DNA of 64,000 nucleotides, taken from positions 62,001 through 126,000 of IMG/VR virus record IMGVR_UViG_3300044796_000662. One strand, written 5' to 3'. Every line of letters starts with the position of its first letter. Position 1 is the first letter of the stretch. A model generated the notes under the pieces. That model was given only the letters and a program-made list of their open reading frames with translations. It did not search any database and was not told where the DNA came from. Both the position numbers and the translations under genes were made by a program. Positions 8,657 to 47,890 of the stretch are shown here, piece after piece.

Positions 8657-9388
8657 TCAGGTGAGGAAACGAGCAGCGACACGCTCGGCGAGCCCAAGCG
8701 AAGCCGTTTTCGTTACGGCAGTTGACCCCTCGGTCGTGTAGGTGGATTCGAGCCCAGGATCGAGATAGTTGAAGCGAATCAAGTCCGCTTCCAGACCGAC
8801 CTCATCGGCCACCTTGTCGAGAGTCTTGAGGAACTCAGCGCGAAGCACCTTGGTACGAGCCCGGCGCTGCGTGGGAAGCGATTGCCCGGCCGACCGTGTT
8901 TCGTTCAGAGCCGAATGCATCCTGACGTTGGCGTTGTAGCCTCGGATGTCCTTCATCGAGAGCTTGTGCCGGCTCAAATAATCCCCGACCATCTCGGCCG
9001 TGACCCTGCCTGTGTCGTGGGCGAACAGCTCGTCGTTGTCGTCTTCTGTGGTCTCGAACGCCGTCTGAAGAGCCTGGATGATGGTCCGGTTCGCTATCGG
9101 CCGACGCTTGCCAGCGCTTCGGTAGGTCGCGGACCACTCTTCCTCCCCCAACTCGACGTTCTTCTTACGCCAACCCACGGGGTCCTCGTTGGTCTCCACC
9201 ATGAGGCCAACCGCCAAAGCCGTGAGGAACCTGTTCGGGTCTCCAGAACTCAAGTCGCGGCGGATGCGTCCCTGCATCGACTCGACCGCCGAACGAATGC
9301 GGCTCAAGCGTCGCGAGGTCGAGCGTGCCTTGCGCTCCTCGCTCATCATACCCTTGGCTTTCGCGCGTGCGAGAACGTTGAAGTTCAC
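8657..9388 (-). CDS. Degenerate type IB topoisomerase-like protein with C-terminal RVAARF tag
   Basis: MKDIRGYNA and VADEVG...NYLDP resemble TopIB KDFRT and VAxxLGxTxxxxxxSY(I/L)DP; GTG 9388 with GGAGG SD and GTGA overlap. Confidence 0.65.
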   Translation of the reverse strand: MNFNVLARAKAKGMMSEERKARSTSRRLSRIRSAVESMQGRIRRDLSSGDPNRFLTALAVGLMVETNEDPVGWRKKNVELGEEEWSATYRSAGKRRPIANRTIIQALQTAFETTEDDNDELFAHDTGRVTAEMVGDYLSRHKLSMKDIRGYNANVRMHSALNETRSAGQSLPTQRRARTKVLRAEFLKTLDKVADEVGLEADLIRFNYLDPGLESTYTTEGSTAVTKTASLGLAERVAARFLT

Positions 9389-11637
9389 GCTGTGGCCTCC
9401 TCGTCGGCGGGCGGCAAGCCCTCGGGAGCCTTGCCGGTCTTGATGACACTCAGGAGCCACTTCGAGGGCTCTTCCTTGAGGTGGCCAAGCACGAACGTTG
9501 TCAGCAACTCGGCGAACCATTCCATGTGGTTCTTGCGCGAGTAGGTCGTGGGGACCCAATCGTGGAGCTGCACTTCGTAGCGGTCGTCGGGCTTGCTGAT
9601 CTCTCCCTTCAGAGTCTCATAGACCTCGTGCCGTTCCTTCTCGACCTCTTTCAGCTCCCGCTCCTTCGCCTCGTCCTTCCCCACGTAAGTCAACGTGGAG
9701 GCAGACTCCGGCACGACAAGCGGGCCTGGCCCACGACGATACATCGAGCTGCGGAGGAGGTACTTCTCCGGCGCTTCGATGATCTCGATGAGGACGTCCC
9801 GGCCCTTCTTGCCGACGATCTTCCCCTTGATGTGGTACTGAACACCGTTTGACCAGGTGTCGTACTCGACCACGGTTCCCTTGCGTGGGAGCGGCCGGTG
9901 GATGTACTGCGTCTCTTCCAGTTCCTTGTAGCGCTTGTTGAGTACGTCGAGGCGCCGCTTCAGCACGTCTCGCGATCCCCCAGCTTGCGTGCGCTTCTGG
10001 CGCATGGCCCACATGAAGCGGGTCATGACCTCGACGTTGTTCTGGCCGCCCGGCACCACCTTGTCGTGGTAGTAGTGCGCCAGCTCGTGGATCAACGTGT
10101 GGAGGAAGCTTGCGTCCTCGTACGCCTTGGGTGCCACCTGGATCGCGGGTGGGCTCGAACCCATGTGGTACACGGCGGCTGCGTGCGAGCCGATGCCGCC
10201 ACCGTAGAGCGCCACAAGGATGTTGTCCTGAAGCGGCACCCCGGCGGCCTGGTACTTCTGCTCGGACTCCAGGAGTAGCTTGCCAACTTCTTCGAGGTGC
10301 TCGGCGTGCTGCTTGATGTAGCGCACCTTGAACCGACCGAACTGCTCCTCGTTGAACTGCACTGCCGCGTGCCGGTTCTTGAGGGCGTCGCGAAGGCTCT
10401 GGTCCGGGCCGATGCCGAGGTTGTTCCGAAGCGTGTTCGCCATCGAGTGGGCCTCGTTGTACGAGATCCCCATCTCCTGCATGATCTGACGGTCGCTCAT
10501 CCCTGACATGAACAGGTGGGCGAAGTCGTGGAGCTTCTTGTCGAAGGCCCCGCCACCCGTGCACTTGCAGCCGCCAGCGGTCTTGCCGGCCGCCTCGGCT
10601 TCCGCCTGTGCCTTGAGCGCGTTCTCCTTCACGTCTGCACGCCAGACCTTGTAGAGCCCGAAGACCTTGTTCTGCTTGCGGCCCTTGGGAATCGGCTCGA
10701 CTTCGATCGTGGGGTTGCCCCACTTGTCCGTACTGAAACCAACGATCTTGCCGCGCTTGTTCTTGTACTTGCCGTACAGAACGATGTCGCCCGGCTTGAA
10801 GTAGTTCGCGTACTTGAGTGCGACGCTGGCGGCGAGTCGGTCCATTCCCCCTTGCTCGTCGAAAAGTAGCTTAGCCTGCTCCATCCGGTCGTAGACGCCC
10901 TTGAGGATGGTCGCCTTGTTCTTCGGCGTCAGATGGTCCTCGATGACCTTCCACGTCGTGGACAGAAGCAGCGCGTAGTGCAGGAGTTTCTGATTGGGGT
11001 GGGGGTCCTTCTCGGCGCGCTCCCGTAGCATCACATGCATCTGGTCGCTCTTGCCGACGTTGTGGATCACCTCGTCGGCGATCTGCTGCATGAAGGCCCG
11101 GACCTCCGAGGGATCGTTGATGTATGGACCCCAGGCCGCCTCCCCCTTCTCCATGACTTCCTTGGGGGAGTAGGTCAGCCCTTTCATGTGATCCATCTCG
11201 GCGGCGTGCGTCGCCTCGTGGATCAGGAGTGAGTACAGGCCGTAGTTCAGGCACGTCTCAGCCCGGCACGAGTGAATGGGCTGGATGCGAAGAGGAGCCG
11301 TGAGGGACCCTTCTGTGTTCAGGTACTCGGCCGGAGTGAGCGCCCCGTTGATCTCCAGCTCGATCACCCCGGGACGTGTCCGGCCTCCGAGCACGGCAGC
11401 GTACTTGCCCTTAGCCTCACGAGCCGACACGTAAACGTCGTACCGAAGAGGGTAGCCTTTGACGGACTCGATCCGAAGCGGCTCTCCGCGGACGATCCCG
11501 TCCACATGCCCGATCGGCTCGTCTTGCTTCTGCCGGCGCAACCAGCGCACGATCTCCGGCACAAGCTGGCCTTCGACGAACTGCGCAATCGCGCCCTTGT
11601 CGAGCCAGATCGGTCGGGTAGCAGAGCGGTCCATCAT
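9385..11637 (-). CDS. Multidomain (polyvalent) protein: zincin, SH3-like, HTH, second zincin
   Basis: LIHEATHAAE and LIHELAHYYH...EWFAE motifs; the N-terminal module is paralogous to 26026..26754. Confidence 0.8.
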   Translation of the reverse strand: MMDRSATRPIWLDKGAIAQFVEGQLVPEIVRWLRRQKQDEPIGHVDGIVRGEPLRIESVKGYPLRYDVYVSAREAKGKYAAVLGGRTRPGVIELEINGALTPAEYLNTEGSLTAPLRIQPIHSCRAETCLNYGLYSLLIHEATHAAEMDHMKGLTYSPKEVMEKGEAAWGPYINDPSEVRAFMQQIADEVIHNVGKSDQMHVMLRERAEKDPHPNQKLLHYALLLSTTWKVIEDHLTPKNKATILKGVYDRMEQAKLLFDEQGGMDRLAASVALKYANYFKPGDIVLYGKYKNKRGKIVGFSTDKWGNPTIEVEPIPKGRKQNKVFGLYKVWRADVKENALKAQAEAEAAGKTAGGCKCTGGGAFDKKLHDFAHLFMSGMSDRQIMQEMGISYNEAHSMANTLRNNLGIGPDQSLRDALKNRHAAVQFNEEQFGRFKVRYIKQHAEHLEEVGKLLLESEQKYQAAGVPLQDNILVALYGGGIGSHAAAVYHMGSSPPAIQVAPKAYEDASFLHTLIHELAHYYHDKVVPGGQNNVEVMTRFMWAMRQKRTQAGGSRDVLKRRLDVLNKRYKELEETQYIHRPLPRKGTVVEYDTWSNGVQYHIKGKIVGKKGRDVLIEIIEAPEKYLLRSSMYRRGPGPLVVPESASTLTYVGKDEAKERELKEVEKERHEVYETLKGEISKPDDRYEVQLHDWVPTTYSRKNHMEWFAELLTTFVLGHLKEEPSKWLLSVIKTGKAPEGLPPADEEATA

Positions 11638-12743
11638 CGTCTCCTGACCAGGATGCGGTCGCCCTGGCTGTTCATAAGGGCGATCTGATCGTCTGACAGA
11701 CGGTTGGGGTGCGTCGCGTAGAGCGTCACGGGTCCCTTTCGAAAGACGATCTTCACGCGAACCTCGCGGCCGCCCTTGTCCTGCCAGACATCGGCGACCG
11801 TGCCCTTCTCGCGCGCCCCGATGTCCAGGTCCCGGGAGCCTTTGAGCACTTCGATCGTGTCACGAGGCTTGAGTGCGAACTCGCCTCGGATCTTGTTCGG
11901 ATCGTCCTGGACCTCGAAGAGCTTCTCGTGCTTGCGCTTCTGTTGGAGGATCTGGAACGAGGTCGGGATGGGATTCGAGGGCCGAAGGTGGATCCCGATG
12001 CGTGCCGTCTCGATCGCATCGTCCTTGCTCGGAGCATCATCAACGATGACCTTACCGTCGTTCGTGAGCACCTTCCAGACGTTACCCTCCTCCGTGACCC
12101 GCACGTCCACGCCGAGGATAGAGCCCTGGAAGAGCTTGGGGTGCACCTCGCGCAAATCAATGTCCTTGACCGGACGTTTGGCGACGTACTCCTTGGCGTC
12201 CTCGATCGACATGGGCACCATCTTGTGATCCGGGTGCACCACAAAGAGGTCCACGTCATGTACCCCCACGGTCATCGAGCACCCAAGCCCGAAGTTGCAG
12301 ATGTTGGCGTCGATCACCGCAGGCTGCTTCTCGGGGCCGTTCGGGTCGAACTCCACCTTGGGGTCGAGATGGTGAAACGTGGTGCCGATCGCGTCGTACT
12401 TCGCGAGGAAGAGGTCGTCCCCGTAGCGGCCGCCCCGCAGCCGGTTGCCGACCTCGATGACCTCCGTAACGTTCTCGGCCCACGATGCTCCGTGAGCACG
12501 TTCAGCGGGAGTCGAGTAGGTGCCGCCCGTGATCTGGCCAGTCTTGAGGATGCGGACCAGCTCCTCCCCGTCGAAGATGCGGTAGAGGGTGAAGCTGGAA
12601 TCGAACTCGGCGACGATCTGGTTCGGCAGAGACGTGAACCGCTGGCGGATCTTGTTCGTCGCGTCACGGTCGATGAGGATGCGGACCGTGCGCGCGTAAC
12701 GCACTCGAAAGCGCGTCAGAACACGGGTAGTCAGCGCGTCCAT
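11634..12743 (-). CDS. Hypothetical protein with RV-x-x-R-F leader, possibly ADP-ribosyltransferase-like
   Basis: 369 aa; MDALTTRVLTRFRVRYA leader; LYR...E...I..TG...GASW pattern. The ORF is solid, the function is tentative. Confidence 0.6.
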   Translation of the reverse strand: MDALTTRVLTRFRVRYARTVRILIDRDATNKIRQRFTSLPNQIVAEFDSSFTLYRIFDGEELVRILKTGQITGGTYSTPAERAHGASWAENVTEVIEVGNRLRGGRYGDDLFLAKYDAIGTTFHHLDPKVEFDPNGPEKQPAVIDANICNFGLGCSMTVGVHDVDLFVVHPDHKMVPMSIEDAKEYVAKRPVKDIDLREVHPKLFQGSILGVDVRVTEEGNVWKVLTNDGKVIVDDAPSKDDAIETARIGIHLRPSNPIPTSFQILQQKRKHEKLFEVQDDPNKIRGEFALKPRDTIEVLKGSRDLDIGAREKGTVADVWQDKGGREVRVKIVFRKGPVTLYATHPNRLSDDQIALMNSQGDRILVRRR

Positions 12744-12746
12744 GCC

Positions 12747-13592
12747 CTACCGCCGGCATCGAAACAGAACCGCCCCAGGAGGGACGATGAGCTGTTCGAG
12801 CCAGCCGTAGAACCCGTTGATGTCCGCGAATTGAGGGAAGAATCTGGACGCGCCGCCGGCGTCGCCAGGGTCGGTCCCCCCGTCAGGCCCCACCCCCCAC
12901 CCCGTGATCCCGTCGCTCTGACGCCTCTTTGTAGGGGTCACGTTGCCCCGAGCCCGTAGTTCCCCGCTGAGGGCGTCCAGAGCGAGCCTGGGGCACCCTG
13001 GGACGCACGACCAGTCGTTGACGGTCTCCAACCCGTCCGCGTCGGCATAGCCCTCCCAGGCGCCTGTGCGGGTCGTCCGCGTGCCCTTCTGCGAGAACTG
13101 CGTCGAGCTACCCCCAGGACCGTTGGGGTAGCCCTTGTGGCCGGGGATGCGGGACTGTCCGGGGGTGCATTCGGGCGTGTGAACGATGGCTAGGTTGGTC
13201 GGCCATCGTCCTCCTGTATGGCTCTCCGTGTAATTCAAGTGCCCGTTTCCCCAAGCATCGTCACTATGGGGAAACGTTCCGCGAGGTCGCCCACGGTCCT
13301 CTGTGGTGGCAACTCGGCAGACGTCGATGTGGAGTCCCCCTGTACCCGTCGAGAGCACTTGCTCCGCCACCGTGGGAGCCTCCAGGGGCTTGCGAAAGAG
13401 CAACACAGGCTCAGCCCGCGGCCCAGGCAAGAGCACGAGCAGCGTGTCCCTCAGGTGCAGCCCCGCCTGCCTGGCATCCAGGGAGGCCATGGGGTTGTCA
13501 CCGAAGACGGCAACGAAGGCCCCAGGGGACAGCTCGTCGATGACCCCGAAAGCCGAGTCCCCGAAGAAGAGGAACGCAGCCCCGAAGGTCAC
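12747..13592 (-). CDS. Degenerate N4/N6 DNA methyltransferase-like protein
   Basis: EPVLLFRKPL...GTGGLHIDVCRV, GRWPTN and GASRFF match the phage MTase core; no DPPY or FxGxG visible. Confidence 0.62.
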   Translation of the reverse strand: MTFGAAFLFFGDSAFGVIDELSPGAFVAVFGDNPMASLDARQAGLHLRDTLLVLLPGPRAEPVLLFRKPLEAPTVAEQVLSTGTGGLHIDVCRVATTEDRGRPRGTFPHSDDAWGNGHLNYTESHTGGRWPTNLAIVHTPECTPGQSRIPGHKGYPNGPGGSSTQFSQKGTRTTRTGAWEGYADADGLETVNDWSCVPGCPRLALDALSGELRARGNVTPTKRRQSDGITGWGVGPDGGTDPGDAGGASRFFPQFADINGFYGWLEQLIVPPGAVLFRCRR

Positions 13593-14596
13593 TGCGCCGA
13601 CTCGTACCAGAGCACGAGCTGCTCGACCATCTTGTATGGGTTGAGGTCGTGCGGAACGACCGCACGATTGAACCCCGCGGCCCTCGTGTGGCCCCCACCA
13701 CCGTTGCTCTTCGCGAACGCGAGGCAGTCGAAGTCCGTGTGGCTGCGCGTCGAGAGGAGCATCTTGGGCGTGCCGTTCTCGACGATGTACGAGAAGCCGA
13801 TGATGAGGTCCGCCTCAGTGCCGAGCGCCTCAGCCGCGTCGCTCGTTGTCTTGAGGCCGTCGAACGTGACGACCTTCGTACCCTTGGCGCTCGTAAACCT
13901 GTAGGCGGACTCGATCGTCTTCTGGACCGACTTCTCCATGCGCTCGATGAGGAGTCGGCCGATAGCCCTGCGTTCCTCCCAGATGGGGACCATCGCCGAC
14001 GAGAAGGGGCTTCCGATGCTCAGCCAGTGCTCGACGGGGTAGAAGCGGAGCATCTCGGCCTGCGCACAGGCATCCCTCCACCACGGGTGTGTATTGAGCC
14101 AGGTGTCACGCACGCCCGCGAGGGTGGCAAACTCCTCGGCCCTCTTCTGCTCTTCGATGGCCACCGTGTCCGTGGCGTCCTCCACCGGATTTACCAGGCG
14201 CCACACGTGACGGAATGCGAGGACGGCGCCGCAGACACCCGGCTCGGTCTTCTCGTTGCCGAAGTGCCCTCGCTTGGGGCCGAAGGCTTCCACGACGTCC
14301 TGCACGCCCTTGTGGTGGTCGAGCACGAGGGTGCCGGCATCGATCCACGGCTTGAGGGCGTCGAGATCGTTCTTCAACACCCCATCGACGGTCTTGGTCG
14401 GCACGTACGGCACGAAGTCGCAGAAGAGGTAGCCGGGCTCTGGCACGAGAGCCTTGAGCGCGTCCGTGTTGTGCTGCATGAACCGGATCTCTGCCTGGGG
14501 CAGAGAGTCATGGAGCAGGATCGCGCTGGCCACCCCGTCCGGACAGTTGTCGTGGACAACGATGGTCTTGACCTGTGCAAGCTCGTGAACGTACAT
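13589..14596 (-). CDS. DHH/DHHA1 phosphoesterase (NrnB-like)
   Basis: HDNCPDG, LDHHK, GGGGHTRAAG. Confidence 0.87.
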   Translation of the reverse strand: MYVHELAQVKTIVVHDNCPDGVASAILLHDSLPQAEIRFMQHNTDALKALVPEPGYLFCDFVPYVPTKTVDGVLKNDLDALKPWIDAGTLVLDHHKGVQDVVEAFGPKRGHFGNEKTEPGVCGAVLAFRHVWRLVNPVEDATDTVAIEEQKRAEEFATLAGVRDTWLNTHPWWRDACAQAEMLRFYPVEHWLSIGSPFSSAMVPIWEERRAIGRLLIERMEKSVQKTIESAYRFTSAKGTKVVTFDGLKTTSDAAEALGTEADLIIGFSYIVENGTPKMLLSTRSHTDFDCLAFAKSNGGGGHTRAAGFNRAVVPHDLNPYKMVEQLVLWYESAQ

Positions 14597-14632
14597 GCCG
14601 CACCCCTACACCGGGGCGCTATGCATGAGTCG

Positions 14633-15010
14633 CTAGAAGAGGTGCCGGTTCGTCCCAGCCTTCTTGTTGGCGGCGATGAGGAGGTCGCAGAGGGTCTTGG
14701 CGATTTGCGAGTCGGCGGTGTGGACCGGCACGACCTTGTCCTCGTACTCGTCCTTCTCGCGGTGGATCGCGATAGCGCCGAGCGAGATCGTCCCGTCGCC
14801 ACCCACACTGACCGTGCACATGCAGTAGTCACTGGACGGTACGTCCTTGAACGAGAGATTCATCTGCGCTTCGAGGCGGTCGTCCCCGACGTCCTCCATG
14901 TTCCAATCCTTGACGTTGGGGAACGCCTGCTTGACGTGCGTGAAGGTGCCCTCGAAGAGCGACGAGGCCCATGTGTCGAACGCGGCGTGAAGGGAATTTG
15001 CCTTGGCCAT
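14633..15010 (-). CDS. Hypothetical protein
   Basis: MAKANSLH... 125 aa; start approximate. Confidence 0.6.
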   Translation of the reverse strand: MAKANSLHAAFDTWASSLFEGTFTHVKQAFPNVKDWNMEDVGDDRLEAQMNLSFKDVPSSDYCMCTVSVGGDGTISLGAIAIHREKDEYEDKVVPVHTADSQIAKTLCDLLIAANKKAGTNRHLF

Positions 15011-15015
15011 GTGGG

Positions 15016-15237
15016 TCACCCTGTAGCGAGGAGTCGAAGTCGGTTCGGGCAGGAATCGTGGTCGTGTGCCCGCATGGGGGAGCCGAAGCACGAGCAGGAC
15101 GCGTCCACGGTGGTGCCGCCGTTCCTGTGGTGCGTGACGATGACCCGTACGCCGTTGCGGCTCTGGTCTTCCTTCCACACGCCCGGGAGCTTGTGGCCGC
15201 ACTCCCTGCAATGCACGGCCTGCTTCTTGATCTTCAC
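15016..15237 (-). CDS. Small zinc-finger-like protein
   Basis: CRECG...CSC..H; GTGA overlap with the upstream gene. Confidence 0.55.
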   Translation of the reverse strand: MKIKKQAVHCRECGHKLPGVWKEDQSRNGVRVIVTHHRNGGTTVDASCSCFGSPMRAHDHDSCPNRLRLLATG

Positions 15238-16475
15238 TGTGCCTCCTGGGCGGCCTTCTTGGCGCGCGGCTTCGAGGTCTTGGGGGTCGGGGGCTCAGTT
15301 GAGAACTTGCAGCGCGTGAGGTTGGTCTGCGCCTCGCCCCTCCATTCCCCGTGCTTCGTGACGGTGCCCGTCACGTAGTAGGACGTTCCGGCTTTCAAGT
15401 CCTGTGCCCCCGAATTCCAGATGGCCTTGTTGCCCGTGACGTCCACGAACTGGTGGATGAACCGTGTACCGAAATCGTTGGTGTACGCGTTCGAGCCCGT
15501 GTACGTGAGCACGAAGGTCTCGCGCTTGTCGATCGTCCCGAAGTGCTGCGAGCGACCCCGGATGGCTGCCCGCGTCAGCTCGCGCCCATGGGCGGATGGG
15601 ATGGAGGCCGCAAGCCCGAGGGTGCGTCGGTCCACGAGACCGGAACACGCGATGGCCCGGATGTTGTGCAGGTAGTCATTGATGCCGGCCTGCTCCTCGG
15701 TAAGTCCTTCGGCCCATTCAAGAGCCGAGGCTGCGGTGACGAGATCGGCAGGACTCGGGTGCTCTTTCTTGAGGTCACGGTCGAGCAGACGTTCGAGAGC
15801 CCGATCAGCGGTCGCACGGCCGCCGATGTCGCGCACGGCACTCCGAGGGACCCAACCGTTGCGACGAACCTCCAGGGTGACGTAGCCGAGGTACTCCGCA
15901 AGGAGGATGGAGGACGCGCCGCCGCCCTTGTAGCCGCCGATGTCCTCGGCCGACTCCGCGAGGGCGCACGCGCTGGCGATGAGGCTCGCAGCCTGAGCGA
16001 CACGGACCACTTTGTCGCTGCCGACGAAGTCTTCCAGGCAGGTGGACCCGACCTGCGTGTGACGCCCGTCCTCGTGCTGAAGGATGTACGTGTCGTTGCG
16101 CTGGCGCTTGTGCTTGCAGTGATCGCAGACGGGGCCGCGAGACCAGTAGACCTTGGGGATGTCGATGGTCGAGACCTTGCGTACGATGGTCTCGTCGTCG
16201 ATGTGTTGAAGCGAGCCGATGAAGGCCCACCCGTTGAGGCGCGGGGTCTCGCCCAAGACGGTCAGCGGCACGCGCGTGACCATCGCGTAGAACTCGACCT
16301 GGTCACCGTACTCCGGATGCGGGACGCGTTCCTTCTTCTGGTACGCCTTGCCCCACTCCCAAGAGATGGGAGCGACGCCGAGCTTCTTGGCGCGCTTGAC
16401 CAGAGCGGCGAAGCCCTGCTCGACGGTTTCGCGGCGATCCGCGAGGATGCCGAAGACTCGGATGGCGGAGTTCAT
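15234..16475 (-). CDS. Phage protein with zinc ribbon and C-terminal OB-fold-like domain
   Basis: CDHCKHKRQRNDTY...VGSTCL; C-terminal beta-rich VTGTVTKHGEWRGEAQTNLTRC. Confidence 0.75.
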   Translation of the reverse strand: MNSAIRVFGILADRRETVEQGFAALVKRAKKLGVAPISWEWGKAYQKKERVPHPEYGDQVEFYAMVTRVPLTVLGETPRLNGWAFIGSLQHIDDETIVRKVSTIDIPKVYWSRGPVCDHCKHKRQRNDTYILQHEDGRHTQVGSTCLEDFVGSDKVVRVAQAASLIASACALAESAEDIGGYKGGGASSILLAEYLGYVTLEVRRNGWVPRSAVRDIGGRATADRALERLLDRDLKKEHPSPADLVTAASALEWAEGLTEEQAGINDYLHNIRAIACSGLVDRRTLGLAASIPSAHGRELTRAAIRGRSQHFGTIDKRETFVLTYTGSNAYTNDFGTRFIHQFVDVTGNKAIWNSGAQDLKAGTSYYVTGTVTKHGEWRGEAQTNLTRCKFSTEPPTPKTSKPRAKKAAQEAQ

Positions 16476-16705: not shown

Positions 16706-16723
16706 GTGCATCCTCCAAACGGA

Positions 16724-16897: not shown

Positions 16898-16905
16898 GGC
16901 GTCCC

Positions 16906-17431: not shown

Positions 17432-17437
17432 GTAGCT

Positions 17438-17510: not shown

Positions 17511-18074
17511 ATGGCGACCCCCAAATACTGGATGCCCACACGGCCCTACAGTGTCATCGACGCCGTCAACAGGATGGCTGCGGCCACGGGCTCGACCGCC
17601 TACGCGATGCGGGCGGCCCACGCGGACTACAACGGCCACGCCGTGAGGGTTTACTGGAACGACTACCGCGGCTACTGGCTCGCCGAGTACCAGTGGGGCG
17701 AACGGGTCGTGCTGGCCCGAGGACAGCTCGCAGAGGCTCTGTACGCCGCTTGCCGGGAGTACAAGCGGGGCGCTCTGGGGGCGTCCGTACGGGCCGCCTA
17801 TCCGGAATCAGTCCGGGAAGGAAACGTGCCCAGCGAATCGATCCCCTACTTCGAGCAGATGTGCGTCGAGCACGGCCTCACGAGCGAGGCGGTGCTCTCC
17901 GAGGAGGCCCACCGTGACACGTGGTGGACTCCCCTGCACGCCAAGGTCAACGAGGCGCTGGACTACGAGCGGCGCGGCTTCGCGCCCGCTGTGGGCTTCC
18001 TGTGCAACTCTGCCACTCTGGACGAGTACGAGGCCAAGCTGAACGCACACTTTGCCGCAAGGCGTCGAGGTTGA
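17511..18074 (+). CDS. Hypothetical early protein, probably leaderless
   Basis: 187 aa; ATG 6 nt after GGGTTGTAGT. Confidence 0.72.
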   Translation: MATPKYWMPTRPYSVIDAVNRMAAATGSTAYAMRAAHADYNGHAVRVYWNDYRGYWLAEYQWGERVVLARGQLAEALYAACREYKRGALGASVRAAYPESVREGNVPSESIPYFEQMCVEHGLTSEAVLSEEAHRDTWWTPLHAKVNEALDYERRGFAPAVGFLCNSATLDEYEAKLNAHFAARRRG

Positions 18075-18098
18075 TTCCGGGCGGGCTTGGGTTGTAGT
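18071..18098 (+). promoter_or_regulatory. Class-1 promoter TTGATTC-N11-GGGTTGTAGT
   Basis: Exact copy; ATG 6 nt downstream. Confidence 0.8.
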
Positions 18099-18104
18099 CC
18101 AGGT

Positions 18105-18269
18105 ATGGACACGAACCTCTACAGCGCGATCGAGACGGGCCGCCTTTCGCTGGTCCTCTCGCTCGCAGCTAACCCGCCCGAGACCTACGAGAGCCACGAG
18201 AGCCAACCGGGGCCAGAGGCGGAGACTGTACGTCCCGCCTCCCGTTCCACGGAGGATGTGGCGGCCTAG
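18105..18269 (+). CDS. Small early protein, probably leaderless
   Basis: 54 aa; ATG 6 nt after GGGTTGTAGT. Confidence 0.5.
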   Translation: MDTNLYSAIETGRLSLVLSLAANPPETYESHESQPGPEAETVRPASRSTEDVAA

Positions 18270-18478
18270 TTGTCGAACGGGCGCCAGGCCAGGTGCGGCG
18301 CCTGTGCGAGGATGCTCGACCGAACGAGGTGCTCCTCGCGCTCTGCCAGCGTGCGATCGATCTCGATCTTCACCAGCGCCAGTTCTTGGAGAAGAGGGCG
18401 ATCCTGGACACGGACGAACGGGTGCGCGTCCTGCTCCTCGGTGATCTCTTGGACCTCAGGGTTGTCGCGGTAGTACAT
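18266..18478 (-). CDS. Small hypothetical protein
   Basis: 70 aa; GGAGG SD. Confidence 0.6.
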   Translation of the reverse strand: MYYRDNPEVQEITEEQDAHPFVRVQDRPLLQELALVKIEIDRTLAEREEHLVRSSILAQAPHLAWRPFDN

Positions 18479-18511
18479 GCCACCCTCCCCCTAAGGGGTC
18501 CGATAGAAGGA

Positions 18512-19006
18512 CTAGCCTCCGACGACCTTGATCTTGTGGACCTGGAGTCCGTCCTTCTCCGCCATGCGCACGGTCTTACCCGTGCCGGTCTTGTAGTTGT
18601 CGTTGAAGAACGCCACGAGGTACGTCGCCACGTCCACGAGGTAACGGTCCCGGATCGTGAAGGACTGGAAGTAGTCGGCCTTGGTGATCTCGTTGCGCAG
18701 CTCGATGACCTCGTCAGCCTTGCGCGTCCAAAAGTGTGTCTCCACCGGCTGCTTCTCGACGCGGTCAGGCACGACTACCGTGAGCCATGGCCGCTGCCCC
18801 TGCCGGAAGTAGAGCGCCGCCTGTAGCGCGATCGTGTCTCCCCCACGAGCGCCACCGAAGTAGATCGCGTCCACGCTCGGGTGCGCCACGAGGGTCTGCA
18901 TGGCGCCCTGGATGACCGCAGCATCCGAGGGCGCCAAGTCTCTGTGGGCCGTGATGCTCGCGATCTCCCAATCGAGGCGATCGGCAGGTCGCGGCCCCGT
19001 GCTCAT
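18512..19006 (-). CDS. SLOG/YspA (DprA-like) nucleotide-binding protein
   Basis: ITAHRD, FGGARGGDTIA, RDRYLVD...LVAF..GTGKTVRMA. Confidence 0.75.
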   Translation of the reverse strand: MSTGPRPADRLDWEIASITAHRDLAPSDAAVIQGAMQTLVAHPSVDAIYFGGARGGDTIALQAALYFRQGQRPWLTVVVPDRVEKQPVETHFWTRKADEVIELRNEITKADYFQSFTIRDRYLVDVATYLVAFFNDNYKTGTGKTVRMAEKDGLQVHKIKVVGG

Positions 19007-19692
19007 GCGTCAGCGGTGGGTGTGGTGAAAGACGCCTTCTTCGCCCGGATCGCGTCGAAGAGCGGGTTGCGGTAGTGGGCGCTCACCACCTGGTCGATGC
19101 GACCTCGGTTGGCGATGTACCACTGCTCGAACTGCTCGGAGGTCGTGATCATGATCAGCTCCGTGAGCAGTCCCTTCTGGACATCGTACTCCTGGAACTG
19201 CAACGGCGGCTGCTTGTAGTCCTCGGCAGCCTTGCTCGTCGCGGCCTCGGGGACCTCGCTGAGCTTCTCGGAAAGTTCGGTCACCTTGCTCGCGGCATCG
19301 AGCGCCTGATTGAGCGCCTCTCGCGCCTTGTCGGCCGCTTCCTTCTGGTTGAGGAAGGTCGAGTTCAGGAAGAGGCGCAGCGCATCGAAAGCCGTCATGA
19401 AGAGGTTGAACTGCGCCTGCGTCTGGATGCCCGGCATCTGCTGGCGCAGCGCCTCGACCATCATCTGGTCAGGGGGCAGACCGCCTGTCTTGGGAAGCGC
19501 GGGCTCTTTGTCGAGTGCCTCGAAGTCCACGATGTCCTTGAGCACCTCTCGTGCGACCTTCTCCATCTCGCCGCCTTGGCGAATGAGGAGCTTCGCGGCC
19601 TGGTTGGCGGCCTTCTGATAGGCCGTCTCCCCGTAGCGCTCCTTGATGGTGGAGAGCTGCGTCAACATCTGTTCGATCGCCGGGTGTGTCAT
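19003..19692 (-). CDS. Helical hypothetical protein
   Basis: GAGGAAG SD before MTHPAIEQ. Confidence 0.7.
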   Translation of the reverse strand: MTHPAIEQMLTQLSTIKERYGETAYQKAANQAAKLLIRQGGEMEKVAREVLKDIVDFEALDKEPALPKTGGLPPDQMMVEALRQQMPGIQTQAQFNLFMTAFDALRLFLNSTFLNQKEAADKAREALNQALDAASKVTELSEKLSEVPEAATSKAAEDYKQPPLQFQEYDVQKGLLTELIMITTSEQFEQWYIANRGRIDQVVSAHYRNPLFDAIRAKKASFTTPTADA

Positions 19693-19699
19693 CGCTTCC

Positions 19700-19993
19700 T
19701 CACGATACGGGCTTGTTCGATGCCTTCTGGAGCATCCGCTGGCGGATCTTCTCGGCCAGCGCTTCACTACCCCGTACACCGCCGCGGGCGAACTGTAGCT
19801 GGAGAAGTCCCTTCATGAGCTGCGGCCCCTGTGCCTTGTCCACGGACAGCTCCCAGCAAGCCTTGCAGTACACGTACTTGTCGAGGGGTTCCTTGCCCGT
19901 GAGCTGCGTGACGGCCTCTCGTTCACTCCCGCTGAGGACGACTTCCTTGAAGACCTCGCGGTCCCGTTTGCAGACGCAACACATGCTGCTCAT
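19700..19993 (-). CDS. Zinc-ribbon protein
   Basis: CCVC...CKACW; ATGA overlap. Confidence 0.62.
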   Translation of the reverse strand: MSSMCCVCKRDREVFKEVVLSGSEREAVTQLTGKEPLDKYVYCKACWELSVDKAQGPQLMKGLLQLQFARGGVRGSEALAEKIRQRMLQKASNKPVS

Positions 19994-20628: not shown

Positions 20629-20652
20629 GGGTGGGAGCTTTGCGTACGATCT

Positions 20653-24698: not shown

Positions 24699-25607
24699 TC
24701 ATTCAGCCTCGGCAGCGGCCTCCAAAGCCTCCTGGACCGTCTCGGGCTCCAGTTCCTTCAGCTCCTTGGCGACAGCGGCCGCGATCAACATCTGGAAGAC
24801 CTCATCCGGATCCACGTGATCCGACTTCTGGTCCTGCGTCGCGATTCGCTCCATCAGCTCGGAGAACAGCTCAATCGAGTGGTGCCCGATGTGAGCGATC
24901 TCCTCGAACGTCGGTAGGTGCTCCAGACGCTTGACCACGGCTTTGATGGCGATCTTCTTGGCCGTGCTCGAAATGAACGAGCCCATGACGCCCTTGGCCA
25001 GGAGACCCGCTCCGGCGCCGATCCCCGCCCCGAGCGCCCCTGCGGCCGTAGCGATGGCAACGTGAGTCGCCACCTTGCGGAACGCCGCCTTCTGGTGCTT
25101 GGACATCGGCTTGCCCTTCATCCAAGCGCTGACACCCTGCCCGGCCTCCTTGAACTCGTGGACCTCTTCCTTGGCGGCGTCCCAGGCGTTCTTGACGAAC
25201 TTGGTGGGCGCTTCCGTGATGGACTTGTGCGCCGACATGAGGGTCTTGAAGCGGAACTCCTCGTCGTGGACGAACTTCTGGACCTTCTCGGGGGCCGACG
25301 CCAAGAAGGACTTGGCCTTCGAGGACAGGCCCTTCATGACGTCCTTCCAAGACGACTTGGGCTTCTTGTCCTTGTGCTCGTCCTTGTGCTCGTGCTCGTG
25401 CTCGTGCTCGTCCTTGGCCTCACCCTCCGGCTTCTTCTCGTGCTCGCCCGGCTTCTTGACCGTGTGCTTGCTCTTGTCCGCGTCGGGGTGGTCGTGGAGG
25501 TACTTCTTCAGCGCCTCAGGCGAAGAGAACTCGAACGCTCGCTGGTATCGCGCGGCCACCCGCAGCGACAACCCCAGCTCGATTGCCCAACGCCCCGACG
25601 CGTTCAT
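24699..25607 (-). CDS. Putative virion/ejected protein with RVAARY leader, His/Glu tract and hydrophobic segment
   Basis: LSLRVAARYQRA, KDEHEHEHEHKD, AVAIATAAGALGAGIGAG; ATGA overlap. Confidence 0.7.
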   Translation of the reverse strand: MNASGRWAIELGLSLRVAARYQRAFEFSSPEALKKYLHDHPDADKSKHTVKKPGEHEKKPEGEAKDEHEHEHEHKDEHKDKKPKSSWKDVMKGLSSKAKSFLASAPEKVQKFVHDEEFRFKTLMSAHKSITEAPTKFVKNAWDAAKEEVHEFKEAGQGVSAWMKGKPMSKHQKAAFRKVATHVAIATAAGALGAGIGAGAGLLAKGVMGSFISSTAKKIAIKAVVKRLEHLPTFEEIAHIGHHSIELFSELMERIATQDQKSDHVDPDEVFQMLIAAAVAKELKELEPETVQEALEAAAEAE

Positions 25608-25996
25608 CGGCGGTAGGTCTTGGCGAAGTGGCTGGACATCGGCTTCCCGTTCTCTTCCGCCGGCATGGGCGTGTCCGTGGGGATGATGTTGTCCATTCCT
25701 TCCTTCTTGCCGCCGGGCGTGTCGCCCTTGTTCTTCATGGACCAGGCCAGAGCCCAAGGGTTGTCGATCTCGTCATGCTTCTTCATCTTCTTGACGGTGT
25801 TCTCCCAACCGGGGGGCGCCACCGCGACCTGATCCATCTCGCCAGCCATGGGGGTCGGCCGAGAGATCGAAGCCTCTTCGTCGGCCTCCATCTCGGCATC
25901 GACGTACTCCGCCAGGTGCTCTTCGAGCAGGGGATTCTGCGCCTTCTTTTCCAGGAAACGCGCTGCTACACGTGCCGAAAGGGCCAGCTTGCTCAT
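25604..25996 (-). CDS. Putative virion protein with RVAARF leader
   Basis: MSKLALSARVAARFLEKKA; NPWALAWSM motif. Confidence 0.7.
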   Translation of the reverse strand: MSKLALSARVAARFLEKKAQNPLLEEHLAEYVDAEMEADEEASISRPTPMAGEMDQVAVAPPGWENTVKKMKKHDEIDNPWALAWSMKNKGDTPGGKKEGMDNIIPTDTPMPAEENGKPMSSHFAKTYRR

Positions 25997-26025: not shown

Positions 26026-26754
26026 CTAGACAAGCCCGTCCTCATCCAGCGCGCGGTAAACGGCCTTGAGGATGAGTGCCTTGTTCTGGGGCGTCAGGTG
26101 GTCCCGGATCTGGCGCCACTTGGGGAGCATGTCCAACACCTTGTTGACGAACTCCTGGGGAGAGGCGTGCGGCATCACGCGCTTGCGGTAGCCGGGGGCG
26201 ATGTTCCGCAGGTTGTCCACGATTTGCTGCATGTACGCGCGGACCTCGTGGGGCGAGTTGTAGTACCTGTCCGCGCTCTCCGGATCGGAGAGCACTGCAC
26301 TCTCCTGGACCAGGTCCTTGTGCGAGTGGTACCACCACTCGGCAGCATGCGTGAGTTCGTGGATCAGGTCGTTGAAGATGAGGTTCGACAGCGTGTGCGT
26401 GTCCACGTAATCGCCGTAGGTCTTGCTTCCGTTCAGACGGATCACAAGGTGTAGGTCCCCATCTTCGAGCAGGTCTGCCCTACGGATGTACGCGCCCGTG
26501 ATGAGCTGGTCGCTTTGGGAAGGCTCCGACGAGAAGGCGCCGTCGATGCGCATATCGTCCCCCCGCACGGACTTGATCTTCCAGGACCATGCGAGAACCT
26601 GAGAGTCGTGCCCAAGCTGCATGTCCTGCGGCTGGCGGCGGCAGTGGTCCTCAACCTTCTTGCCCAGCTCCTCGGCGAGCTGACGGATCTCACCCTTGTC
26701 CAGGGGGATCGGCCGGGTCGCGTACCGTGCGGCTACACGTAGGGTGAGCGTCAC
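26026..26754 (-). CDS. HExxH metallopeptidase-like protein with RVAARY leader
   Basis: LIHELTHAAE...YYNSPHEVRAY; paralog of the N-terminal module of 9385..11637. Confidence 0.75.
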   Translation of the reverse strand: MTLTLRVAARYATRPIPLDKGEIRQLAEELGKKVEDHCRRQPQDMQLGHDSQVLAWSWKIKSVRGDDMRIDGAFSSEPSQSDQLITGAYIRRADLLEDGDLHLVIRLNGSKTYGDYVDTHTLSNLIFNDLIHELTHAAEWWYHSHKDLVQESAVLSDPESADRYYNSPHEVRAYMQQIVDNLRNIAPGYRKRVMPHASPQEFVNKVLDMLPKWRQIRDHLTPQNKALILKAVYRALDEDGLV

Positions 26755-26777: not shown

Positions 26778-28061
26778 CTACGCGCGGGCCTTCAGAGTCC
26801 GACGCCCATCGACGATGATCGGCACTCCCTTACCCGTGATCACGTCGGCCGTGATGCGGATGCTCGCGATGTCCATGCTTGGACCATCGTAGGCGTAGGG
26901 TGCGAGAGTCTCCTCCAGGATCGAACGGAGCCCACGCGCTCCCGTGGGTCGGCGCTTCGCCTCCTGGCCGATGGCCAGGAGAGCATCCGTGTCGAACTGC
27001 AAGTCGATGTCGTCCATGGCGAAGAGCGCCTGGTACTGCTTCACGAGGGCGTTCTTCGGCTCCGTGAGCACCTTGACCATGTCCTCGTCAGACAGCTCCA
27101 GCGTGCTCGTAACGATGGGCAGACGGCCGAGCATCTCGGGGATGATCCCGAACTCCAAGATGTCCTCGCCCTTGACCTCCGTGTAGACCTCGTTGAGCGT
27201 GAGCTTGCGCCGCTTCGTGTCCTCCGAGCCGAAGCCGAGCCGCGAGGACTTGTTCACCCGCTGCTCTACCACCTCGTCGATGCCCGCGAAGCTGCCCGCA
27301 GCAACGAACAGGATGTTGGTCGTATCGAGCACGTCCACGTTCGAGCGCACCTCGCCGTTGGGGCCTACAGACGTCACGGACACGTTCTTGCCCATCCCAC
27401 GCGTGACGGGCACAGAGCAGCCTTCCAAGGTCCGCAGCATGCCTTGCTGGACGCCTTCGCCCGTGATGTCGCGGTAACCGGAGGCGGAACGTCCGCTCTT
27501 GCGGGCGATCTTGTCGAATTCGTCGAGCAAGATGATGCCCCACTCGGCGCGCTGGATGTCCCCGCCGGCGTTCTGGACGAGCCCGCGAAGCATGTCGTCC
27601 GCGTCGTCGCCCACGTAGCCTTGCTGCGTCAGCCGGGTGCAGTCCTGCGTGTAGAACGGGACCTTCAGAAGCTCGCTGATCGCCCTGAACGTCTCGGTCT
27701 TGCCCGAGCCAGTGGGGCCGAGGATCAGCATGTTGGACTTCTGGACCTTGATCGAGCCCGCCTTCTTGGCCCGAGCCGCGTCCCTACGCTTGAAGTGGTG
27801 GTAGACCGCGGTGGAGACCGCCCTCTTCAGCCTTTCCTGCGCGATGATGTGCTCGTCGAGGTACGCCTTGATCTGATGGGGCGTCCCAAGGACGGGCTCC
27901 CGCTTCTTGTCGCCCTTGGGGGCCGACTGCTCGATGAGGTTCGAGGCTCCTTCCACGCACGTCTCGCAGATGTAGACGCCGTTGCCCTTGATCAGGCGGT
28001 TGTTGGGGACCTCGTTCTTCTCGGACCCACAGAAAGAGCACACCTCGTGGTCGGTCGGCAT
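26778..28061 (-). CDS. clpX: ATP-dependent Clp protease ATPase subunit ClpX
   Basis: CSFC..C..C zinc domain, GPTGSGKT, GYVG pore loop, DEFDK, GEGVQQ, LGF loop, TGARGLR. Confidence 0.93.
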   Translation of the reverse strand: MPTDHEVCSFCGSEKNEVPNNRLIKGNGVYICETCVEGASNLIEQSAPKGDKKREPVLGTPHQIKAYLDEHIIAQERLKRAVSTAVYHHFKRRDAARAKKAGSIKVQKSNMLILGPTGSGKTETFRAISELLKVPFYTQDCTRLTQQGYVGDDADDMLRGLVQNAGGDIQRAEWGIILLDEFDKIARKSGRSASGYRDITGEGVQQGMLRTLEGCSVPVTRGMGKNVSVTSVGPNGEVRSNVDVLDTTNILFVAAGSFAGIDEVVEQRVNKSSRLGFGSEDTKRRKLTLNEVYTEVKGEDILEFGIIPEMLGRLPIVTSTLELSDEDMVKVLTEPKNALVKQYQALFAMDDIDLQFDTDALLAIGQEAKRRPTGARGLRSILEETLAPYAYDGPSMDIASIRITADVITGKGVPIIVDGRRTLKARA

Positions 28062-44688: not shown

Positions 44689-44713
44689 CGGGAACCCCTA
44701 CACCGAACGGACG

Positions 44714-46492: not shown

Positions 46493-46531
46493 CGCCCCGC
46501 CCCTACACCGGGCGCTGGGGCTCCTGGGCGC

Positions 46532-47890
46532 TTAGCTCAGGATGGGCAGAAGCAGATCTAGCTGTTCCTTCGGGAGCTTACCGATGGCGTAGAACGAGAC
46601 CATCTCGGCGAAGTTCTCGCCGGGGCCGCCCTTCTTGGCGTAGCCCGTGATGAAGTCCAGCGGGTCCACCTTCTGCTCAACACCGTTGAGCTTGAAGAAC
46701 ATGGCCGCCGGCATGACGATCGTCTCCCTGCGGGCGATGGGGAACTTGTGCTCCTCATCGGGCTCGTGCTCAGCCCGGCCCTTCTCTGCGCAGACGAAGC
46801 ACCGCAGAGGGTTGGCCGGGGCGAGCTTCACGGAGCGGCGACGGGTATCGCGCTCGATGACCTTCCAAGGCTCCCCCTTATAGGGGACTGACGCGCCAAA
46901 CGCGGGCAGCTCGGTTTCCGACATGAAGCCCGTGTGCGTGTTGATCGTGGAGTAGAGCTGCGAGATCTCGTGCTCTTTGCCTTGCAGGAACTTGTGCTCC
47001 AGCCGGTGCGTCAGCTCGTGACAGAGAACCCGGACGGTGTCCATGTTCACCTTCGAGTCGGCACGAATGAACATCTCGTCCTTGGCGACGACGTAGAACG
47101 CCGCCCAGTTGGGCCGCTCGATGCGGTTGGACAGGATGATGTCCCCGTAGTTGACCTTCCCCAAGCCGATGCCTGCCATCTTTTGAGCGGCCTCTTCGGC
47201 GAGCTTGGCGATGTTCTGCATCTGCTCCGTGCTGAAGCCGCCCGAGTTGACGAGCGTGAAAGGCCCGGCCTTGAACCGCGTTGCGCCCTCTCCCTCGCCT
47301 GCGTGCTGCTTGCCCTGGCTGATCGCGATCTCGAAGACCTTCTCCTGCTTGCGGAAGTCTTCGAGGAAGTCGAGGTAGATCTGGACAGCCTTGGCTCGCG
47401 CCTCTTCGTAGGTGCGGCCCCGTGTGCTGAAGCGCGGCGTACGGGCGTAGAACTTCGCGATAGCCTCAATCGCTTTGCGAGGCTTCGGCGGCAGCACAAG
47501 CTGTTGCAGGATGGCCCAGCACAGGTTCTGCGCGACGTCCTGGATCTTGCCCCATCCGTGCTGCATCGAGTGAGTGGTGATCTCGTACGACAGGTCGCGC
47601 TCTTTGCGACGCTTGCCGTCCTGGGACTCTTCGATGGTCTGGACCAGCGCGTTCTCACGGACGGCCTTGATCTTCTCGGCGGGGGCGCCTTCGGCCTGTA
47701 GCTTCGTGACCTCGGCGAATGCCTCCACGTACTTCTTGGCCATCGCCTCCTTCTCGGCGTACTTGGCCACGGCCCTCTTGAACTGCGCAAGCAGATCCCC
47801 GGGGTCGCCGAAAGAGTCGGCCCGCTTCGAACGTTCGGCGACCCGCGAGGCGAGGACGACGCGCTCTACAACTCGATCCAAGGACTTCAT
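46532..47890 (-). CDS. Zincin-like metallopeptidase protein with RVA-type leader
   Basis: LCHELTHRLEH...GENFAEMVSFY; leader SRVAERSKRA. Confidence 0.75.
   Translation of the reverse strand: MKSLDRVVERVVLASRVAERSKRADSFGDPGDLLAQFKRAVAKYAEKEAMAKKYVEAFAEVTKLQAEGAPAEKIKAVRENALVQTIEESQDGKRRKERDLSYEITTHSMQHGWGKIQDVAQNLCWAILQQLVLPPKPRKAIEAIAKFYARTPRFSTRGRTYEEARAKAVQIYLDFLEDFRKQEKVFEIAISQGKQHAGEGEGATRFKAGPFTLVNSGGFSTEQMQNIAKLAEEAAQKMAGIGLGKVNYGDIILSNRIERPNWAAFYVVAKDEMFIRADSKVNMDTVRVLCHELTHRLEHKFLQGKEHEISQLYSTINTHTGFMSETELPAFGASVPYKGEPWKVIERDTRRRSVKLAPANPLRCFVCAEKGRAEHEPDEEHKFPIARRETIVMPAAMFFKLNGVEQKVDPLDFITGYAKKGGPGENFAEMVSFYAIGKLPKEQLDLLLPILS

What the first reader, a model, noticed from the sequence alone, without database searches (positions are those of the whole stretch)
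8657..47890. Dispersed RVAAR(F/Y) tag ending in basic-x-Ala on unrelated proteins: candidate virion-cargo addressing and processing system
Seen: the same short motif sits at the termini of otherwise unrelated ORFs: MSKLALSARVAARFLEKKA (25996), LSLRVAARYQRA (25607), MTLTLRVAARYA (26754), MDALTTRVLTRFRVRYA (12743), LASRVAERSKRA (47890), and C-terminal KTASLGLAERVAARFLT (8657). An internal variant, DRLAASVALKYA, lies between modules of 9385..11637. The homologous domains of 26754 and 11637 both begin TRPI(P/W)LDKG immediately after R-Y-A or R-S-A, which marks a domain boundary at R-x-A. Module linkers in 9385..11637 also end in KYA, KTA and RHA. Known: T4 and phiKZ internal head proteins carry capsid-targeting propeptides removed by the prohead protease. 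Inference: a phage-wide address tag routes peptidases, a TopIB-like protein and a possible ART into the head for ejection, with cleavage after a basic-x-Ala site.
Basis: partly seen in the sequence, partly recalled or inferred. Interest (0 to 1): 0.82.

Follow-up and report, generated by a model that had tools for sequence, protein, structure and literature searches.

The report
Shared terminal address tag, huge phages
Six unrelated proteins of this huge phage, and about a hundred in its relatives, carry the same short end-tag (L-x-L-R-V-A-A-R-F/Y), most likely a docking peptide that brings accessory enzymes to one common site, probably the assembling phage head.

Summary
The motif is real and far beyond chance. 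Exact RVAAR[F/Y] occurs 4 times against 0.003 expected. A profile finds exactly six tags in the window, all within 16 residues of a protein end. Codons differ synonymously, so selection acts on the peptide. Orthologues only 30-50% identical keep the tag. It also sits on other families (TopoIB, two HExxH families, J-domain proteins, a 130-aa core protein) across a large clade of huge phages: 95 non-redundant tags, no reversed-sequence decoy at the same score. It is portable: N-terminal, C-terminal, tandem, or at junctions of fused modules. AlphaFold leaves it unpacked.

The receptor is not shown. Tagged genes recur inside the head and packaging operon, including this phage's own operon about 90 kb beyond the window. 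That favours head targeting (about 0.4). Tagged genes also flank a phage ClpX in at least 11 of 14 lineages, but a 485-kb relative has tags and no ClpX (ClpX docking, about 0.2).

The proposed cleavage after basic-x-Ala is not supported. [KR]-x-A occurs at chance frequency, and no position after the tag is conserved beyond Ala at +3 (34%). The ART call is unsupported. The peptidase calls rest only on HExxH motifs.

The parts
26719..26754 (-). N-terminal tag VTLTLRVAARYA of the 242-aa HExxH protein (gene 26026-26754), 24 nt downstream of ClpX
   Evidence: Conserved in 15 homologues down to 28% identity. AlphaFold gives residues 1-11 pLDDT below 50, not packed on the domain.
25940..25987 (-). 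N-terminal tag LALSARVAARFLEKKA of the 130-aa protein (gene 25604-25996)
   Evidence: Positional counterparts in L006 and L003 carry MDKLALKVAERF and MDKLALRVAQRI.
25536..25580 (-). N-terminal tag ELGLSLRVAARYQRA of the 302-aa protein (gene 24699-25607, ATGA overlap with the upstream stop). It is followed by a second motif, FEFSSPEALKKYLHDHPDADKSKHTVKK.
   Evidence: Orthologues in L003, L004 and L006 keep the tag.
8660..8701 (-). C-terminal tag SLGLAERVAARFLT on the TopoIB-like protein (gene 8657-9388)
   Evidence: Relative L033 has tags at both ends. Fusion proteins P0032 and P0036 keep a C-terminal tag.
12693..12743 (-). N-terminal variant tag MDALTTRVLTRFRVRYA on the 369-aa protein (gene 11634-12743; unknown N-terminal domain plus SH3-like C-terminus)
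   Evidence: score 29.7. Nearly all of the inspected homologues carry an N-terminal tag. Helix 3-16 has pLDDT about 60.
47819..47860 (-). N-terminal variant tag VVLASRVAERSKRA on the 452-aa HExxH protein (gene 46532-47890). LDRVVERV just upstream may be a second, tandem copy.
   Evidence: score 25.9. Orthologues carry RVATRY (L134), NVVARF (L135), NIIARF (L143) and RVAARF (L091).
10807..10844 (-). Degenerate internal tag DRLAASVALKYA between module 1 (HExxH) and the SH3-like module of the 750-aa two-peptidase protein (gene 9385-11637)
   Evidence: Not significant by matrix. Homologous in position to the tandem tags preceding the same module in P0040.
26778..28061 (-). Phage ClpX with C4 zinc finger, Walker A, GYVG pore loop and LGF ClpP-docking loop. 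It is itself untagged.
   Evidence: A tagged gene is adjacent in at least 11 of 14 ClpX lineages.
47887..49146 (-). Relative of the tagged J-domain proteins. Here the HPD motif is lost and the N-terminal tag is degenerate.

Best explanation
The motif is a self-contained docking peptide of about 14-17 residues. Its consensus is hydrophobic-x-[L/R]-[R/K]-V-[A/V]-A-R-[F/Y]-x-x-(A), often starting M-D-x-L, and it is followed by a flexible linker. A large clade of huge phages attaches it to many otherwise unrelated accessory proteins.

Shown: selection acts on the peptide, the tag is portable between families and between protein ends, it prefers termini, and it is not part of the folded domains.

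Inferred: all tags bind one slowly evolving receptor. The most likely receptor is a component of the assembling head (portal, scaffold or core, or inner capsid surface). Tagged enzymes (TopoIB, zincin-like proteins, J-domain proteins, small basic proteins) would then be loaded into the procapsid and delivered with the DNA. This works like the T4 capsid-targeting sequence, but each cargo carries its own tag rather than being fused into a single polyvalent protein.

Removal of the tag by a protease is neither required nor indicated by the sequences.
For: Peptide-level conservation and statistics.

Conservation in orthologues at 28-50% identity, with one 60-residue insertion between tag and domain.

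Breadth: 95 non-redundant tags at 8 bits or more, against no reversed-sequence decoy at 8 bits in the locus sets (one at 8.4 in LR745208). 74 are N-terminal, 4 C-terminal, and 12 more have a Met just upstream.

Tags at fusion junctions: P0022, P0026, P0028, L158, and the LR745208 HAD+TopoIB protein.

AlphaFold leaves the tag at low confidence and detached.

Head context, from 80 portal loci of the clade:
- The operon runs X665, tagged 130-aa protein, TerS-like, TerL, (tagged TopoIB in 25 loci), portal, variable stretch, prohead protease, MCP.
- In LR745208 the tagged TopoIB lies between portal and prohead protease/MCP.
- This phage's own head operon (L183, about 90 kb beyond the window) has the tagged 126-aa protein upstream of TerS, and a tagged 205-aa protein just before the protease.
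- In the 529-kb relative, ClpX and two tagged genes lie between portal and protease.

Cargo-like payloads: fold relatives of the HExxH domain include a protein annotated as structural in Serratia phage BF (weak, E=0.023) and, below significance, polyvalent-protein domains.

Precedent: the T4 CTS.
Against: - There is no virion proteomics, and no receptor has been identified.
- In the window itself the six tagged genes lie among replication and nucleotide-metabolism genes, three of them right after ClpX.
- The tag density near ClpX (about 1 per 5 kb) exceeds that around the portal (1 per 23 kb).
- J-domain proteins are unusual cargo.
- The T4 CTS is strictly N-terminal and is cleaved. This tag is not restricted to the N-terminus and shows no cleavage motif.
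- Gene position in a head operon is circumstantial.
Confidence: 0.4

Rival explanations
1. The tag is a docking or degradation signal for ClpX. It would bind the N-terminal zinc-binding domain of the phage (or host) ClpX, as the C-terminal tail of SspB does. Tagged proteins would then be tethered to ClpXP as substrates for timed removal, or as cofactors. This would be a phage-private proteolysis code.
For: - The phage ClpX is complete, with zinc finger, GYVG and LGF loop.
- The gene next to ClpX is tagged in at least 11 of 14 lineages, although the family differs (HExxH-242, HExxH-452, J-domain, 89 aa, 225 aa). That is about 6-7 independent arrangements against a 10-13% base rate.
- ClpX itself is untagged.
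- The neighbours have a proteostasis flavour: J-domain proteins and zincins.
- The tag sits on flexible linkers at either end and in tandem, as suits a hexamer carrying three N-domain dimers.
- The E. coli SspB tail is RGGRPALRVVK, which resembles LALRVA and RRVVTR.
Against: - LR745208 (485 kb, read whole) has about 10 tags and no ClpX homologue by tblastn.
- The most conserved tag residues (R at -1, F/Y at 0) have no counterpart in the SspB tail, and the Leu that matches SspB L161 is variable.
- The most conserved tagged genes sit in the packaging operon, not beside ClpX.
- Substrates encoded in the same operon, downstream of their protease, would be odd.
Confidence: 0.2
2. The tag binds some other common partner. 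Candidates are a conserved host factor (for example DnaK, a membrane surface or the replisome) or the other tags themselves, assembling tagged proteins into a complex or viral factory unrelated to the head or to ClpX.
For: - Near-invariance of the core across phages with 48-65% G+C fits a very conserved receptor.
- The pattern is amphipathic and basic-hydrophobic.
- J-domain proteins carry it.
- Neither the head nor the ClpX context is universal.
Against: - Generic membrane or chaperone binding does not usually demand an almost invariant R-V-A-A-R-F/Y core.
- No candidate partner emerges from the data.
- The clustering with the head operon and with ClpX would be left unexplained.
Confidence: 0.2
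3. The tag has no shared function. It would be a mobile N-terminal sequence module spread by recombination among genes, or a DNA- or RNA-level signal near gene starts that happens to be translated.
For: Most copies are at gene starts. Tandem and junction copies could arise through recombination.
Against: - Synonymous codon variation accompanies an invariant peptide.
- The tag is conserved over orthologues at 28-50% identity.
- C-terminal copies exist.
- The hits lie in the predicted coding frames.
Confidence: 0.05

Closest known systems
T4 capsid-targeting sequence (CTS) of internal proteins IPI-IPIII (Mullaney and Black 1996; reviewed in PMC9026906)
   Same: A short peptide shared by otherwise unrelated, non-conserved proteins of one phage. 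It is portable, lies at a protein end, and its carriers are accessory or anti-host proteins. Alt even has propeptides at both ends.
   Different: The CTS is 10 residues, strictly N-terminal, has an unrelated sequence and ends at a gp21 site (L/I-x-E) that is cleaved. Here the tag can be C-terminal, tandem or internal. No cleavage motif is conserved, and packaging is unproven.
Polyvalent proteins and MuF-type head-targeting of injected effectors (Iyer et al. 2017, as cited in PMC7824862)
   Same: The payload repertoire is similar (zincin-like peptidases, a ParB-like sequence motif in one case, nucleic-acid enzymes). Genes lie next to the portal. Multi-module fusions exist (the 750-aa protein, P0022, P0032, L158).
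   Different: Here most effectors are separate genes, each with its own short tag rather than one MuF domain. No MuF domain was seen.
SspB C-terminal ClpX-binding tail (RGGRPALRVVK)
   Same: A short basic-hydrophobic peptide at the end of a flexible linker. It shares a partial A-L-R-V-V/A string. Here the genes are adjacent to ClpX.
   Different: The tag is longer, and its best-conserved R-F/Y has no SspB counterpart. It is found on roughly 10% of genes in the window. It is also present in a genome without a phage ClpX.
Encapsulin cargo-loading peptides and microcompartment encapsulation peptides
   Same: Short terminal peptides, at either end and joined by linkers, that load diverse enzymes into an HK97-fold or protein shell.
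   Different: The sequences are unrelated, and those systems are cellular compartments, not virions.

Membership tests
T4-type capsid-targeting sequence | The same short peptide on otherwise unrelated proteins of one phage | tested here: met
   Six tagged proteins in the window share no detected family apart from the two HExxH-motif proteins; 95 non-redundant tags across the clade.
T4-type capsid-targeting sequence | Strictly N-terminal propeptide ending at a prohead-protease cleavage site | tested here: not met
   C-terminal, tandem and junction copies exist. No conserved residue follows the tag except Ala at +3 in 34%. [KR]-x-A is at chance frequency.
T4-type capsid-targeting sequence | Carriers are found inside virions, and the tag suffices to package a foreign protein | not testable with these tools
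   No cultured member exists: the only phage-database hits are an uncultured phage genome (LR745208) and an enrichment-culture virus. Only gene position in head operons is available.
ClpX N-domain-binding tail (SspB type) | L-R-V-V-K-like peptide on a flexible linker | tested here: inconclusive
   Partial resemblance to RGGRPALRVVK. The matching Leu is variable, and the conserved R-F/Y is absent from SspB.
ClpX N-domain-binding tail (SspB type) | Co-occurrence with its ClpX | tested here: inconclusive
   Adjacent to ClpX in at least 11 of 14 lineages. LR745208 has tags and no phage ClpX. Host ClpX could not be examined.
ClpX (gene 26778-28061) | C4 zinc finger, Walker A, GYVG pore loop, IGF/LGF ClpP-docking loop | tested here: met
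   Pfam zf-C4_ClpX, AAA_2 and ClpB_D2-small. All motifs are conserved in five phage ClpX sequences.
Type IB topoisomerase (gene 8657-9388) | Topoisom_I catalytic core with the C-terminal tyrosine | tested here: met
   Pfam PF01028 at 23.7 bits, exactly the cut-off. 37-39% identity to L033, which scores 1e-28. The FNYLDPG tyrosine region is present. The full catalytic pentad was not checked.
Zincin-like metallopeptidase (26026-26754, 46532-47890, 9385-11637) | HExxH plus a third ligand, and a zincin fold | tested here: inconclusive
   H132, E133, H136 and E170 are invariant. No Pfam or PHROG hit. No PDB fold match at E<0.5. BFVD matches are to uncharacterised phage proteins plus a few peptidase-annotated ones, which are below significance.
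ADP-ribosyltransferase (gene 11634-12743) | ART fold and R-S-E or H-Y-E triad | tested here: not met
   Model pLDDT 89.5. No ART among the PDB matches; only the C-terminal SH3-like part matches, to the Pif1 SH3 domain.

The most novel reading that the evidence does not exclude
The two contexts are one pathway. The phage ClpX recognises the tag, unfolds the tagged enzymes and helps load them into the procapsid (for example at the portal vertex), or hands them to the head-maturation machinery. The tag would then be the address code of an ATP-driven protein-packaging system in huge phages. Relatives without ClpX would use direct binding or the host ClpX.
Probability: 0.08. Interest if true: 0.92.

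Novelty: new variant of a known kind. Interest (0 to 1): 0.7.

Why it matters
If the tag is an address code, one short peptide defines the set of proteins that a whole clade of uncultured huge phages sends to one place. The clade has more than 300 portal relatives in IMG/VR.

This would turn dozens of hypothetical genes into a predictable cargo or client list. It would point to TopoIB, zincin-like enzymes and J-domain co-chaperones as delivered or co-regulated host-takeover factors. It would also offer a compact handle for loading foreign proteins into phage heads, or for controlling their stability.

It makes a long-standing question directly testable with a single peptide: how large phages choose the proteins they package.

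Tried and rejected
- DNA-level repeat: rejected, because the codons differ synonymously.
- Close cultured relatives: none. blastn and tblastn against GenBank phages found only LR745208 and Rctr197k.
- Pfam and PHROGs on the tagged proteins: nothing beyond TopoIB.
- Tat or Sec signal peptide: rejected, since no hydrophobic core follows the tag.
- Basic-x-Ala cleavage site: at chance frequency and not position-conserved.
- ART fold for 11634-12743: not found.
- PDB fold match for the HExxH domain: none.
- ESM Atlas on the Cys-rich 675-aa neighbour: uninformative.
- PDB sequence search for the prohead protease and TopoIB: nothing.
- Tag-like strings in this phage's 1347-aa post-portal protein: below significance, 2.7 bits or less.
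- Helix versus strand from hydrophobic moments: ambiguous.
- Literature search for the motif: no prior description.
- Genome-wide ClpX presence or absence across the clade: could not be settled, because only 6-10 kb flanks of each contig are readable.


Full report
WHAT THE WINDOW IS

The window has 63% G+C. Genes run mostly on the minus strand from 5.7 kb onward. It corresponds to positions 62,001-126,000 of a 363-kb IMG/VR contig. A 570-kb assembly also exists.

It encodes the following:
- a replication and nucleotide-metabolism block: family A DNA polymerase, DnaB, primase, SNF2 helicase, ThyX and NT5C;
- tail-fibre-like proteins;
- a complete ClpX at 26778-28061.

No cultured relative exists in GenBank phages.

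THE OBSERVATION

- Exact RVAAR[F/Y] occurs four times in the whole six-frame translation, always in a coding frame of the minus strand. The expectation is 0.0027, and 400 shuffles gave none.
- A position matrix gives exactly six hits in the 68-gene set, with scores 25.9-41.3. Nothing else scores above 8, and the shuffle maximum is 15.2.
- All six lie within 16 residues of a terminus.
- The four exact copies use different synonymous codons, so the conserved object is the peptide, not DNA.

The six carriers are:
- the 242-aa HExxH protein (26026-26754);
- a 130-aa protein (25604-25996);
- a 302-aa protein (24699-25607);
- the TopoIB-like protein (8657-9388, tag at the C-terminus);
- a 369-aa protein (11634-12743);
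- a 452-aa HExxH protein (46532-47890).

IT IS A CONSERVED, PORTABLE MODULE

Homologues of the 242-aa protein at 28-53% identity keep LxLRVAARF immediately before the RPIPLDKG domain. One homologue has a 60-residue insert between tag and domain. Orthologues of the 302-aa, 369-aa and 452-aa proteins in related contigs also keep it.

A pattern scan of IMG/VR for LRVAARF recovered further families among the chance hits:
- a family of about 130 aa;
- a bona fide TopoIB with tags at both ends (Pfam 1e-28);
- a protein with a weak, below-threshold match to the DUF4258 toxin-like family;
- a 436-aa HExxH protein.

A second lineage uses the variant [I/V]-R-[N/Q/H]-V-V-A-R-F. In that lineage the tag appears on J-domain proteins (Pfam DnaJ above threshold), in tandem copies, at a C-terminus, and at the junction of a 743-aa fusion.

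Fusions of the 369-aa family with a downstream module or with TopoIB retain a tag at the junction or at the C-terminus. In P0040, tandem tags precede the same SH3-like module that follows DRLAASVALKYA in the window's 750-aa protein.

A profile HMM built from 49 tags finds 60 hits at 8 bits or more in the first set of loci and 67 in 80 portal loci. No reversed-sequence decoy reaches 8 bits in either set. The single best decoy, in LR745208, scores 8.4 bits.

The 95 non-redundant tags give this consensus, numbered relative to the aromatic residue:
- -8: L/I/M;
- -5: R/K (93%);
- -4: V (96%);
- -3: A/V;
- -2: A (77%);
- -1: R (98%);
- 0: F/Y (95%);
- +3: A (34%);
- then a Pro/Gly-rich linker.

By position, 74 are within 25 residues of the first start, 12 more have a Met just upstream, 4 are C-terminal and 5 are internal.

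AlphaFold models of two carriers are confident for the domains (pLDDT 87.6 and 89.5). They leave the tag as a low-confidence helix that does not pack on the domain.

THE CLEAVAGE IDEA

[KR]-x-A occurs 9 times in the 750-aa protein against 8.5 expected. A loose basic/Ala site is found in 12.5% of random 8-residue windows. After the tag, no position is conserved apart from Ala at +3 in a third of cases, and this is as easily a small residue on the binding face.

Tags at C-termini, in tandem and at junctions do not fit a removable N-terminal propeptide. Known large-phage prohead proteases cut after Glu: T4 at L/I-x-E and SPN3US at A-x-E. Cleavage is therefore unsupported, though not excluded.

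WHERE THE TAG MIGHT LEAD: TWO CONTEXTS

First context, ClpX. The phage ClpX has the zinc finger, the GYVG pore loop and the LGF ClpP-docking loop. In at least 11 of 14 ClpX lineages the neighbouring gene is tagged, although its family differs. The E. coli SspB ClpX-binding tail, RGGRPALRVVK, partly resembles the tag.

Against this, the 485-kb genome LR745208, read in full, has about ten diverged tags and no ClpX homologue. In addition, the best-conserved R-F/Y has no SspB counterpart.

Second context, the head operon. The 130-aa tagged family lies two genes upstream of TerL. Eighty portal loci of the clade show a conserved order:
1. p498
2. Cys-rich X665
3. the tagged 130-aa protein (48 loci)
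4. TerS-like
5. TerL
6. tagged TopoIB (25 loci)
7. p174 paralogues
8. portal
9. a variable stretch
10. prohead protease
11. scaffold-like protein
12. MCP

Tagged genes recur in the portal-to-protease stretch. In LR745208 the tagged HAD+TopoIB protein lies between portal and protease/MCP. In the 529-kb relative, ClpX and two tagged genes occupy that stretch. This phage's own head operon (L183, about 90 kb beyond the window) has the tagged 126-aa protein before TerS and a tagged 205-aa protein just before the protease.

The payload repertoire resembles injected polyvalent-protein domains. The HExxH fold has a weak match (E=0.023) to a protein annotated as structural in Serratia phage BF, and non-significant matches to polyvalent-protein domains.

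VERDICT

The tag itself is solid and, as far as the searchable literature shows, undescribed. I take it to be a docking peptide for one common receptor. My estimates are:
- head targeting of cargo, the best-supported destination: about 0.4;
- ClpX docking or a degradation signal, the main rival: about 0.2;
- another hub: about 0.2;
- a combined ClpX-assisted loading pathway, the most novel reading not excluded: about 0.08.

The protease-site and ART elements are not.

Noticed in passing
L139 4696-7023 and L143 4552-6894 (IMG/VR 3300010429_000387, 3300013121_000005): The ClpX genes are about 775-780 aa because an intein-like insert interrupts the Walker A motif (GPSG|CHRKGQLV...).
   Followed up: partly
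window 25430-25535 (residues about 25-59 of gene 24699-25607); also L143 and L158: A second recurrent motif follows the tag in several proteins: (F/H)x(S/T)PEALKxYLxxHPxADxSKHTVKK. It is duplicated in tandem in L158 7283-8644. Its function is unknown.
   Followed up: partly
window 47887-49146: This is a homologue of tagged J-domain proteins (Pfam DnaJ in relatives). Here HPDRGG is replaced by INYKGLGG and the N-terminal tag has decayed, so it may be an inactivated co-chaperone.
   Followed up: partly
L183 (same phage, contig 214.9-236.8 kb): 11897-15940: A 1347-aa Lys/Glu/Pro-rich low-complexity protein lies directly after the portal gene. It is followed by the prohead protease (18062-19573), a Gln-rich scaffold-like protein (19593-20981) and the MCP. 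Its tag-like strings are below significance.
   Followed up: partly
LR745208 392525-396214 (L178 42525-46214, minus strand): A 1229-aa ORF beside the major head gene has LAGLIDADG homing-endonuclease hits and looks like a mobile insertion in the head module. Two IS-like ORFs (427 and 433 aa) flank TerL.
   Followed up: no
window 50642-51520 and 51581-51955: A papain-family (C1) peptidase-like protein lies next to a small membrane protein. This may be a lysis cassette.
   Followed up: no
window 9385-11637: A 750-aa multi-module protein with two HExxH modules, two SH3/KOW-like modules and an apparent HTH segment (by eye only). It resembles a small polyvalent protein. Its N-terminus lacks the tag that its orthologues carry (L158 3189, LR745208 21.7 kb).
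   Followed up: partly
L158 4798-5973, L143 3550-4542, L137 4968-5963: An HExxH family immediately upstream of ClpX in the second lineage carries a DUF5661 domain followed by an internal tag (FFYQDRMARRVAARF).
   Followed up: partly
window 52295-56857 and 60174-62759: Large tail-fibre-like proteins have E1_FCCH-like domains (Pfam E=1e-6 to 6e-10), with homologues in LR745208.
   Followed up: no
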